In this document: positions 54,101-57,100 of the stretch, piece after piece
Layout of the letters: each line of letters begins with the position of its first letter
Numbering within the stretch: position 1 is the stretch's first letter
DNA from: Phallusia mammillata
Taxonomy: Eukaryota
DNA: 64,000 nt
NCBI GenBank assembly: GCA_965637545.1
Contig: OZ281494.1
Location: forward strand, 13,640,001 to 13,704,000
Direction: 5' to 3'
Notes under the pieces: model-generated
Database searches by the model: none
Seen by the model: only the letters and a program-made list of their open reading frames with translations
Told to the model about the DNA's origin: nothing
Made by a program: the position numbers and the translations under genes

Positions 54101-57100
54101 TTACTTTGTGCGTTAACACGGTCACGACATAAAATTGCCATGTTTATCAAATTGGGGGGGTACAGCTATTTAAAATGGCGTTAAAATTTAGATAAAAGAG
54201 CAAATTTAATAAAGCGATTAAACCGATACATTATTTATTAATGAATTAACCCTGACTTGCATCAATGTTATCAGAAAGTTAATTTGCTTCGGCATGATGG
54301 TTTTTCGCAACACAACACACATGTACACCACAACTTTCACACAATTGATTGTCGATTACTACTATATATCAAGCGCTAAAGTTCAGGTCATAAATTGCAC
54401 ACAATAGTTGATTATGATGTTAGTTTCTGATGAATAAACCGACTAGCATCGAACAATCACGTGTTTTTGTCAGTTACAATATTGAAAACACACATGTTTA
54501 GATGACGTTGAACCGTTTCGTTGAAGCGATTTTTGGTTATGTTTAATATATGGCTTCAAATCGTTCGGCTGAGGGCAACGTTTGCATGCTAATTTAACGC
54601 TTTGATGTGTGTGCACAAAATTGAGTCGATGATTAGGTTAATCTATCCGTGAGGCTTGCGTAGTAGGACGAGGAGTGACAATGGGAATTCCACATCGTCG
54701 TATTAGACACGCACATTCACACCCACATACAGATATACAGGACAACACACGATACAGTGATGTGCACACCAACCATACACAGTAGCTACCACATATAAAG
54801 TGACATAAATGCATTATTTTTAATTGTATAAAACATAAACGAAAGTACCAAGTTTGAAGCAAGTCTGCAAATAGCTTCAAAATGTTTACAACCGTAAAAG
54901 TTATACAGGTATATCGTTTACCTACAACCAGCTCGTTGAAAAGTCAATTTGAACGAGTGAATTTTGCTTTGTAGTATTTTTTTGCCAGTGATACTTAGCA
55001 AGCATTTTTGCTCAAAACTTAGCACTCTCGTAGGACAACAGACAAACATAGAGAACGATACAAAACGTATACAAACTAACCAATTGCCACCAAGTCATAG
55101 TGGGTCCATTGTCGGCATACATAAACCACCACGAGGCCGATGCAACAGTGGCCATACCCACGTATGCTGTGATAACAGAGGGAACACACGGGTAAGAGTT
55201 AAAGATAAAAACCAAGAACTCAAAACTAGAAGCTAAAACGGCACCCGGAACAAACTCATGCATCGATCGTCTCTTATTGCCCGCTTGCTCTCAAGGCAAG
55301 TGGTAATGTTCGGTGCGCTGGATAATTTTGGATTCATTTTTTTTGTATGAAACGTTTGGTTTTGTTAGCGTAAGATTATTGAAACTGTATTACGAAAGGG
55401 TTTCAGAAAGTCTGTATTTAAAAAAAATTGCTAACTGTTACAAGATATACTTCAATCTTTATAGGTCAGGTATATCCACCTTTTAACTTTAATCGGGTAC
55501 AGAGAGACCGATCCCGGACACATAGGAAAAATTTATTCAGTAGTTAGAACTGAAAGTAAAAGCTGATTGGTTATAGGCATCGGTTAGCAATTGAAATATG
55601 TGGTCTACGCAGCCGGAAGCAAATGGTGTTTGAAGTTAAATTAGCTGCAACTAAAAATCACTGCAGCGGTTCTTATTTGATGACGCAGCGAGGAACTTTC
55701 GGGCCGACGCGAAGCATATTTACATGGTAAAGCCGATTCCAGCGACCAAAAAAATTTGCACCAATCATATGAACTGTATTGGTCAGGTGATTTTTTGACA
55801 AGCCTTACAAAACAAACCACTTTCAGGTTTGTTGTACTGGCTGATCAAGCTGTACCAGAAACGAGATTTTCACTTCATGAGTGTGAAATAAGTAGAAGGA
55901 AATCATGGTTTGTCGTGATCACGTGAACTTTTTGTGATTATCCAACGTAACTGTGCGGCTGAAATCGGCTGCACCATGTAAAACGCGCGACCCAAAGAAA
56001 GAGGCGGGTAGTACACAGAAGTGTGAAGCAGACCGATCGGCTTCGCTACAGCGAGCAAACAGAACAAAATACAAAAATATACGATCCGATATTGATGCAC
56101 ATTCCTAAAGGAAAGGAACTGAGGCAATATCAGGAAGGACAAAGCACGCATTTGCGCTTCGACGTAACGTATAGATAAGTATACGAAACGCGCGCGTTTG
56201 CAATTTAACTAACCACTTGCCACCAGGAGACTTGGGGTCCGTTTGGCGCATATAGATACCACCAGAGCGATGCACCCACAGTGGAGCTGCCTACAAATAC
56301 TACAGCCCAAGACAGAGACGAGTTAGTTTGGTTAATCTTTGTGTTTTCTTTTTCAAAGGGTTGTAATTTCAGACTTACAAAAATATTTTTAGAAATCAAG
56401 TAGAGTTTAGAATCTTGTCAAAATTTTGTTTGTGTAAAAACGTTGAATTGCCATTTTCAATGTTTCCGGGTACGTATTTAGCAAAAGTTTTTAAATAAGT
56501 TATAACACAAAAATATCATATAAAAAACTGGGTCAAATTGGGGTTTATACTTGCCCAATATCGTTGTTCAGAAAAACAGGTGGTCTAAAAACCTAATGTT
56601 TCAATTAAAGTTATGCCCACATTTTACTACTTATTTTTCACCGTAAGTTTAAGTCCCCAAAGCCACCCATATGCCTTTGAAATATACAATAACGTACCTC
56701 CAACCACACAATATCTGAACATTAACCATCCATTAATAAGAGTATCCTTGGTGGATCTCGGATGTTTCTTCATAATGTCGAGGTCGGCTGGGTTGAAGCT
56801 AAGTGCGGTGGCTGGCAAACCATCAGTAACCAAGTTCACCCAGAGAAGTTGGACGGGGATAAGAGCTTCAGGAACACCAAGGGCAGCGGCCAAGAAAATG
56901 CTGACACAAAATCGTATAATTTAAACAAGGTTGCATAAAAAACACATCGTTAGAAATATACATAGGGACCCTTGCTCTTAAATGTTGTCAAAGAGTACAA
57001 TGAGAAAGGCATGAAACATGTACATACCACAAAAAATGTTTGGTAAAACATATTAACTATTTGTATATAATGTGACACCCAAACATAGGGTTTTTAATTA

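What the first reader, a model, noticed from the sequence alone, without database searches (positions are those of the whole stretch)
55081..56299. SERCA-C carries two mutually exclusive 86-nt exons for M7 and the start of luminal loop 7-8
Seen: two homologous exons of identical length (86 nt) and identical phase (1 in, 0 out), both with the donor GTTAGT and both open. They share only 14 of 29 residues: [29 protein letters not shown] and [29 protein letters not shown]. Including both or neither shifts the frame, so exactly one must be used. Known: vertebrate ATP2A1-3 diversify mainly by splicing at the C-terminus. In SERCA1a this segment is the C-terminal half of M7 plus the start of L7-8, and L7-8 is where the SERCA2b luminal tail docks. 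Inference: one gene makes two pumps with different transmembrane cores. I am not aware of this being described for SERCA, but I cannot check the literature.
Basis: partly seen in the sequence, partly recalled or inferred. Interest (0 to 1): 0.82.

Follow-up and report, generated by a model that had tools for sequence, protein, structure and literature searches.

The report
Sea-squirt SERCA swaps its M7 exon
One of three tandem calcium-pump (SERCA) genes in this sea squirt has two alternative 86-base exons for membrane helix 7, a pair kept across ascidians and already listed as RefSeq isoforms elsewhere, so the finding is real but not unprecedented.

Summary
SERCA-C (minus strand) has two homologous 86-nt exons, E-up (56299-56214) and E-down (55166-55081). 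They share phase, AG acceptors and GTTAGT donors, and both map to SERCA1a residues 842-870.

The mutually exclusive reading is well supported, mostly by comparative evidence.
- Using both exons or neither gives an early stop.
- A related species (L002) keeps both exons inside unalignable introns. E-up shows pS 0.72 and pN 0.10, like the constitutive downstream exon.
- The Ciona and Styela loci have the same two-exon layout.
- RefSeq isoforms of Ciona intestinalis, Clavelina lepadiformis and Styela clava differ in this 29-residue segment.
- Two transcript contigs of an unnamed relative differ by the exon swap alone.

In this species, all four RNA contig sets I could lay (two studies) join E-down and skip E-up. 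E-down is therefore the default there, and E-up use here is inferred, not seen.

E-up-type exons group with the single M7 exon of paralogues A and B. E-down-type exons group with vertebrate-like M7.

I found no paper describing this, but the database annotation predates the scan. I file it as a new member of a known kind, of moderate interest.

The parts
56698..56900 (-). Constitutive upstream exon (M5-M6 to the first part of M7), ending ...GTT GGA G|gtacgt
   Evidence: RNA contig joints in 4 runs. It is 100% identical at protein level to L002 and 95.5% (64 of 67) to Ciona.
56214..56299 (-). E-up, alternative exon ([29 protein letters not shown]), 86 nt, AG...GTTAGT, with a weaker polypyrimidine tract
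   Evidence: Orthologues with an intact frame and splice sites occur in L002, L003, Ciona and transcript L086. pN/pS is 0.14 against L002. It is skipped in the 4 RNA contig sets laid.
55167..56213 (-). 1047-nt intron between the two alternative exons
   Evidence: Apart from the exon edges it cannot be aligned to L002.
55081..55166 (-). E-down, the exon used by default ([29 protein letters not shown]), 86 nt, AG...GTTAGT, with a strong polypyrimidine tract
   Evidence: Joints 56698>55166 and 55081>52683 in all 4 RNA contig sets. 28 of 29 residues match L002 and 26 of 29 match Ciona. pN is 0.015.
52550..52683 (-). Constitutive downstream exon (rest of L7-8 and the start of M8)
   Evidence: RNA joints; homologous exon in L002, Ciona and Styela.
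52073..52190 (-). Next constitutive exon (M8-M9)
   Evidence: RNA joints.
51811..51928 (-). Next constitutive exon (M10); the transcript continues beyond 51811
   Evidence: RNA joints and a loose end at 51811.
27226..27311 (-). Single M7 exon of paralogue SERCA-A (E-up-like type), for comparison
42383..42468 (-). Single M7 exon of paralogue SERCA-B, identical in sequence to that of A

Best explanation
SERCA-C is a P2A Ca2+-ATPase gene carrying an ancient tandem duplication of the 86-nt exon for SERCA1a-equivalent residues 842-870 (the C-terminal part of M7 and the start of luminal loop L7-8). The two copies are spliced in a mutually exclusive way. E-down, the vertebrate-like copy with the stronger 3' splice site, is the default. 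E-up, a tunicate-specific type that also serves as the constitutive M7 exon of paralogues A and B, is included instead under some condition not sampled here. Because 86 is not a multiple of 3, transcripts with both or neither exon are frameshifted with an early stop and are presumably removed by nonsense-mediated decay (NMD). Only single-exon mRNAs can therefore give a pump. What is shown: the anatomy, the frame logic, E-down use in this species, selection on both exons, and exon-swapped transcripts and annotated isoforms in relatives. What is inferred: E-up use in this species, removal by NMD, and any functional difference between the two pumps.
For: Exon anatomy is; mapping to SERCA1a 842-870 is; early stops for both or neither exon are. 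All four spliced RNA contig sets (studies P5 and P6) join 56698>55166 and 55081>52683. L002, a related species whose introns do not align, keeps both exons at 86 nt with AG and GTTAGT. Window versus L002: E-up pS 0.72, pN 0.10, Fisher p=3e-7, the same pN/pS (0.14) as the constitutive downstream exon; E-down pS 0.48, pN 0.015. The Ciona (L088) and Styela (L089) loci have the same layout of upstream exon, first 86-nt exon, second 86-nt exon and downstream exon. RefSeq isoform pairs differ in this segment: Ciona XP_078491536.1 vs XP_078491537.1, Clavelina XP_076815494.1 vs XP_076815495.1, Styela XP_039274640.1 vs XP_039274641.1. Transcript contigs L086 and L087 have 1 mismatch in 2593 nt upstream, 0 in 411 nt downstream, and 38 of 86 within the exon.
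Against: No read or contig from this species shows E-up spliced in, although contigs drop minor isoforms and only two studies were laid. A word search with an E-up junction peptide found no short protein fragment. RefSeq isoforms are automated models. NMD of the double or skipped forms was not tested. No functional data exist for either form.
Confidence: 0.86

Rival explanations
1. E-up is a once-functional alternative exon that has recently fallen silent in this species. It is still intact only because too little time has passed, so the gene now makes only the E-down pump.
For: Only E-down appears in the four RNA contig sets. E-up has the weaker polypyrimidine tract. Two or three of the three E-up residue differences from L002 fall on the window lineage when Clavelina and L086 are used as outgroups.
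Against: Frame, AG acceptor and GTTAGT donor are all intact. The window-lineage changes are conservative (K>Q, T>S). pN/pS of 0.14 against L002 equals that of a constitutive exon, while synonymous sites are near saturation. Contigs cannot show minor or tissue-specific isoforms.
Confidence: 0.08
2. E-up acts mainly as a regulatory 'poison' exon. Including it together with E-down gives a frameshifted NMD target that tunes SERCA-C output, rather than producing a second pump.
For: Including both exons gives a stop inside E-down. Both exons carry the same weak GTTAGT donor.
Against: A poison exon needs no protein-level constraint, yet E-up keeps its reading frame and type-specific residues across Ciona, Clavelina, L002 and L086 with pN well below pS. 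In a relative, a full-length open transcript carries the E-up type alone.
Confidence: 0.04
3. The pair is an assembly or annotation artefact, or a chance open frame in the intron.
For: None found.
Against: At least 14 public runs from 4 studies hold the stretch. The same two-exon layout is present in independent assemblies of three other species and in one metagenome contig.
Confidence: 0.01

Closest known systems
RefSeq isoforms of the orthologous ascidian SERCA gene (Ciona intestinalis XP_078491536.1/XP_078491537.1 and XP_009861042.3/XP_009861043.3; Clavelina lepadiformis XP_076815494.1/XP_076815495.1; Styela clava XP_039274640.1/XP_039274641.1)
   Same: It is the same gene and the same 29-residue segment, with the same exon order (divergent type first, E-down type second) and the same 86-nt length.
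   Different: Those are automated models in other species. I found no paper that discusses them. The first exon of Styela is not clearly of the E-up type.
Vertebrate ATP2A1-3 alternative splicing (SERCA1a/1b, 2a/2b/2c, 3a-f)
   Same: The enzyme family is the same, and isoforms are made by splicing (established knowledge; PDB hits).
   Different: Vertebrate variation sits at the C-terminal tail through optional exons or alternative 3' ends. It is not a homologous exon swap inside the 10-helix membrane core. Two human catalogues of mutually exclusive or tandem-duplicated exons do not mention ATP2A in their main text.
Tandem-duplicated exon substitution in other Ca2+ and ion transporters (the PMCA family in human, fly and worm; SCN exon 5a/5b; CACNA1C exons 8/8a)
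   Same: All involve mutually exclusive use of homologous tandem exons, often ancient and tissue-specific, that swap a membrane or regulatory segment (PMC9741552, PMC8373072, PMC12772994; the CACNA1C example is from my own knowledge).
   Different: The gene family and segment differ. Here exclusivity can rest on frame and NMD alone, and no conserved competing RNA structure was found.
Paralogues SERCA-A and SERCA-B in the same window, and Ciona 'SERCA 1-like'
   Same: Their single M7 exon is of the E-up-like type (TVGASLWW...WWQV). The 29-column tree gives a 99/97 split that places it with the E-up types.
   Different: These genes have only one M7 exon, and no second copy lies in their introns.

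Membership tests
SERCA (P2A-type Ca2+-ATPase) | P-type phosphorylation motif DKTGT and hinge motif TGDGVNDAP | tested here: met
   In SERCA-C, DKTGTLT lies at 61862 and [21 protein letters not shown] at 57363.
SERCA (P2A-type Ca2+-ATPase) | M4 PEGLP Ca2+-site motif and overall similarity to solved SERCA rather than to PMCA or Na,K-ATPase | tested here: met
   [12 protein letters not shown] lies at 61991. For both exons, all PDB hits at E-value <=10 are SERCA1 or SERCA2 chains. The closest full-length named proteins are ascidian and vertebrate SERCAs.
SERCA (P2A-type Ca2+-ATPase) | Complete gene with N-terminal A-domain and M1-M3 | tested here: inconclusive
   Within the window the gene starts at about 62680. 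The exons homologous to the TGES and M1-M3 exons of A and B were not found before position 64000, so they probably lie beyond the window edge.
Mutually exclusive exons from tandem exon duplication | Adjacent homologous exons of equal length and phase with usable splice sites | tested here: met
   Both are 86 nt, phase 1 to 0, AG...GTTAGT, and about 73% identical in nucleotides.
Mutually exclusive exons from tandem exon duplication | Mature transcripts carry exactly one of the two | tested here: inconclusive
   In this species only E-down-only transcripts were seen. In a relative, both single-exon transcripts exist, and RefSeq models both forms in three species.
Mutually exclusive exons from tandem exon duplication | A mechanism that excludes both-exon and no-exon products | tested here: met
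   A frameshift with an early stop occurs in both cases. Removal by NMD is inferred, not tested.
Mutually exclusive exons from tandem exon duplication | Both copies maintained by selection across species | tested here: met
   pN is well below pS for both exons against L002 and Ciona, while the introns cannot be aligned. Type-specific residues are conserved across Ciona, Clavelina, L002 and L086/L087.
RNA-structure-controlled mutually exclusive exons (docking site and selector) | Conserved competing intronic base-pairing | tested here: not met
   The window has a 21-nt, 76% complementary pair (55060-55080 with 56322-56342). It largely reflects the GTTAGT donor pairing with an ACTAAC branch site, and it has no counterpart in L002.

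The most novel reading that the evidence does not exclude
The exon switch toggles the pump between a canonical, vertebrate-like M7/L7-8 and a tunicate-specific M7/L7-8 that is also hard-wired into paralogues A and B. This would change an intrinsic property, such as Ca2+ affinity, turnover or lipid dependence, or change the docking of a partner on the M7/M10/L7-8 face. Vertebrate SERCA2b uses that face for its extra tail. A natural, conserved pair differing in only 15 residues would make the role of M7/L7-8 directly testable.
Probability: 0.3. Interest if true: 0.6.

Novelty: new member of a known kind. Interest (0 to 1): 0.45.

Why it matters
SERCA isoform diversity is usually described as tail variation. 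Here a chordate lineage has kept, across the three ascidians examined, an exon swap inside the membrane core (M7 and the start of L7-8). That region is regarded as a static support domain and, in SERCA2b, as the docking face for the regulatory tail. The two natural variants differ at about 15 positions in an otherwise identical pump. Expressing both forms, for example the Ciona pair, would be a clean test of what this segment contributes to Ca2+ affinity, kinetics, drug sensitivity or partner binding. It also adds a P2A-ATPase example to the small set of ancient tandem-exon substitutions. Its importance is limited because RefSeq already annotates the event in other ascidians and because no functional difference has been shown.

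Tried and rejected
1. A typed 50-residue E-up junction peptide in the word-indexed protein search found no candidates of 27-87 aa. This says little, because short fragments of this species are sparse in that database.

2. The all-against-all representative search with the upstream exon returned mostly genomic ORF fragments. It was useful only for P0002, which led to L001.

3. I tried to build a scaffold-plus-exon alignment to get round the length filter (A1-A3). MAFFT scattered the fragments, so I abandoned it. Instead I used the open frame of a metatranscriptome cDNA (L008) as a full-length query by reference, and that worked.

4. Exact look-ups of the second isoforms (P0360, P0368, P0248) found nothing, because only the longest product per gene is indexed. 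The X1 isoforms gave the loci.

5. Competing RNA structure: inverted repeats in the window are not conserved in L002, so I rejected this as a supported mechanism.

6. Recent copy from a paralogue: E-up, E-down and the A/B exon are all about 70-73% identical in nucleotides with no shared flanks, so this was rejected.

7. The metagenome scan of 80 loci found the duplication only in L002. Most of the other loci were cDNA-like, intron-poor (probably fungal or protist) or too short, so they do not show that the duplication is absent outside tunicates.

E-up could therefore not be sought in further runs of this species.

Full report
**What is in the window.** Motif scanning shows three SERCA genes in tandem on the minus strand. 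SERCA-A lies at about 30.6-26.4 kb and SERCA-B at about 45.8-41.1 kb. SERCA-C runs from about 62.7 kb down to about 50.2 kb. Its 5' exons were not found before the window's end at 64000 and probably lie beyond it. The window has no N runs.

**The observation.**
- The upstream exon ends ...GTT GGA G|gtacgt at 56698.
- E-up (56299-56214) is preceded by ...ctgtAG and followed by gttagt.
- E-down (55166-55081) is preceded by ...cacAG and followed by gttagt.
- Both exons are 86 nt, phase 1 in and phase 0 out.
- A permissive tblastn finds only four copies of this exon in 64 kb. Two are these exons. The other two are the single exons of A and B, which are identical to each other.
- phmmer against PDB sequences places both exons on SERCA1a residues 842/843-870, the C-terminal part of M7 and the beginning of loop L7-8.
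- Including both exons gives a stop inside E-down. Including neither gives a stop 13 codons into the next exon.

**Expression in this species.**
- At least 14 public runs from four studies hold the genomic stretch. Runs of two other studies (P5, P6) hold only about 4% of its words, as expected of exons alone.
- Runs of P5 and P6 also hold all sampled words of E-down.
- I laid four of these runs on 51700-57400. Each gave one spliced contig with GT..AG introns on the minus strand.
- In all four, the joints are 56698>55166 and 55081>52683. E-down is included and E-up is skipped.
- E-down is therefore the default exon in those samples.
- Contigs drop minor isoforms, and I could lay only one set of runs. 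This does not show that E-up is unused.

**Is E-up a live exon? Comparative genomics.**
- A word-indexed protein search with the upstream exon, followed by exact look-ups, fetched contigs from relatives.
- L002 is a 17-kb contig in a JGI metagenome. It encodes an upstream exon identical in protein to that of the window, but its DNA is so diverged that the introns cannot be aligned.
- L002 carries both exons in the same order. Each is 86 nt, with AG acceptors and GTTAGT donors.
- Its E-up orthologue matches 26 of 29 residues and its E-down orthologue 28 of 29.
- Nei-Gojobori counts for the window against L002:

| Exon | pS | pN | Note |
|---|---|---|---|
| Upstream (constitutive) | 0.87 | 0.02 | |
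| E-up | 0.72 | 0.10 | Fisher p = 3e-7 |
| E-down | 0.48 | 0.015 | |
| Downstream (constitutive) | 0.80 | 0.11 | |

- E-up thus evolves like an ordinary, moderately constrained coding exon. E-down is very strongly constrained.
- Comparisons with Ciona and with L003 (probably Clavelina) give the same picture.

**Transcripts and annotation in relatives.**
- A metatranscriptome cDNA (L008) from the metagenome scan gave a full-length open frame that could serve as a query by reference.
- Searching its M5-M8 region returned named ascidian SERCAs. Listing their 90% clusters and reading the M7 segment gave these isoform pairs:
  - In Ciona intestinalis, XP_078491536.1 and XP_009861042.3 carry the E-down type ([29 protein letters not shown]).
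  - In the same species, XP_078491537.1 and XP_009861043.3 carry the E-up type (VYVGTMTTGASIWWYIAAPNGPKLSFWQV).
  - In Clavelina lepadiformis, isoforms X1 and X3 carry the E-down type. Isoform X2 carries VFVGTATVGASIWWIMAAPDGPKVTWWQV, which is identical to the exon on marine-metagenome contig L003.
  - In Styela clava, isoforms X1 and X2 also differ in this segment.
- In each pair, the flanking residues and C-termini that I compared were identical.
- An unnamed tunicate has two full-length transcript-derived proteins from different Logan runs. Their contigs (L086, L087) show 1 mismatch in 2593 nt upstream, 0 in 411 nt downstream, and 38 of 86 within the exon. This is direct transcript evidence of the exon swap.
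- The genomic loci of Ciona (L088) and Styela (L089) show the same layout. A divergent first 86-nt exon is followed by an E-down-like second exon.
- The GTTAGT donor of E-down is conserved in the window, L002, Ciona and Styela.

**Origin.**
- E-up, E-down and the A/B exon are about equally distant from one another in nucleotides (70-73%). This is within the range of other variable exons between C and A/B, which is 71-76%.
- E-up is therefore not a recent copy of a paralogue exon.
- A 29-column tree has little resolution. It does give one strong split (99/97). One side holds the E-up types plus the single exons of A/B, L006 and Ciona 'SERCA 1-like'. The other holds the E-down types plus Styela, Molgula and vertebrate sequences.
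- The simplest reading is that the duplication predates the split between the C and A/B genes, and that A/B kept only the E-up-like copy. An old conversion between E-up and the A/B exon cannot be excluded.

**Mechanism.**
- What is shown: frame incompatibility of both-exon and no-exon products, a stronger polypyrimidine tract at E-down, and an identical, somewhat weak GTTAGT donor on both exons.
- What is inferred: NMD removes mis-spliced forms, and a trans-acting factor activates E-up or represses E-down in some cell type.
- I found no conserved competing RNA structure.
- Between the window and L002, E-down has a run of 39 bases without any change (55126-55088, TGGTGG...ACTATG) and a conserved GU-rich stretch just after its donor. 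These could be splicing signals, but I did not test that.

**Type-specific residues (SERCA1a numbering).** The two types differ consistently at these positions:

| Position(s) | E-up type | E-down type |
|---|---|---|
| 842 | V | A |
| 846 | S/T | M/I |
| 850-853 | GAS(L/I) | ASAS |
| 856 | Y/I/L | F |
| 860 | P | D/N/E |
| 864 | Q/K | T/S/A |
| 865 | V/L | M |
| 870 | V | L |

What these differences do to the pump is unknown.

**Novelty.**
- Seven full-text searches, and look-ups in three papers, found no description of an M7 exon swap in SERCA.
- Two catalogues of human mutually exclusive or tandem-duplicated exons do not mention ATP2A in their main text. One lists the related PMCA family.
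- RefSeq has nevertheless modelled the two forms in Ciona, Clavelina and Styela, so the event is public though apparently undiscussed.
- I rate it a real, conserved feature of moderate interest, and a new member of a known kind.

Noticed in passing
window 26400-30600, 41100-45800 and 50200-62700 (minus strand): Three SERCA genes lie in tandem. A and B are identical in the M7 exon, at 0 of 87 nt. Their other exons are similarly distant from those of C, which suggests a recent A/B duplication. In Ciona, a 'SERCA 1-like' protein sits on a contig of the same length (9,518,626 nt) as the C-type gene.
   Followed up: partly
window 57140-57601: One blastn alignment between C and A/B (86-88% identity) runs straight across the 76-nt intron 57365-57440 that separates two exons. 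An intron this well conserved between paralogues points to gene conversion in the catalytic-core exons.
   Followed up: no
window 55055-55126; L002 3270-3346: The 3' half of E-down shows no change over 39 nt (55126-55088) between two species whose neighbouring exons are saturated at synonymous sites. A GU-rich stretch after its donor is also conserved. pS is 0.48 against 0.80-0.87 in the flanking exons. This may be a splicing enhancer.
   Followed up: partly
window 55060-55080 and 56322-56342: A 21-nt, 76% complementary pair links the E-down donor region to the ACTAAC branch-site region upstream of E-up. It is not conserved in L002 and is probably the trivial complementarity of GTTAGT to ACTAAC.
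   Followed up: yes
P0359-P0362 (Ciona), P0249 and P0366-P0368 (Clavelina): The orthologous gene also has two alternative C-termini (1003 versus 1029 or 1030 residues). RefSeq combines these freely with both M7 exons. Whether the two choices are coupled is unknown.
   Followed up: no
L003 (ENA marine metagenome, PRJEB8682) and L002, L004, L006 (JGI metagenomes): Ascidian nuclear DNA turns up as multi-kilobase contigs in environmental metagenomes. The E-up exon of L003 is identical in protein to Clavelina lepadiformis isoform X2.
   Followed up: partly
window 15311 and 16070 (plus strand): LDL-receptor class A-like repeats (C..GVNDCGDGSDE) were hit by chance in the motif scan.
   Followed up: no
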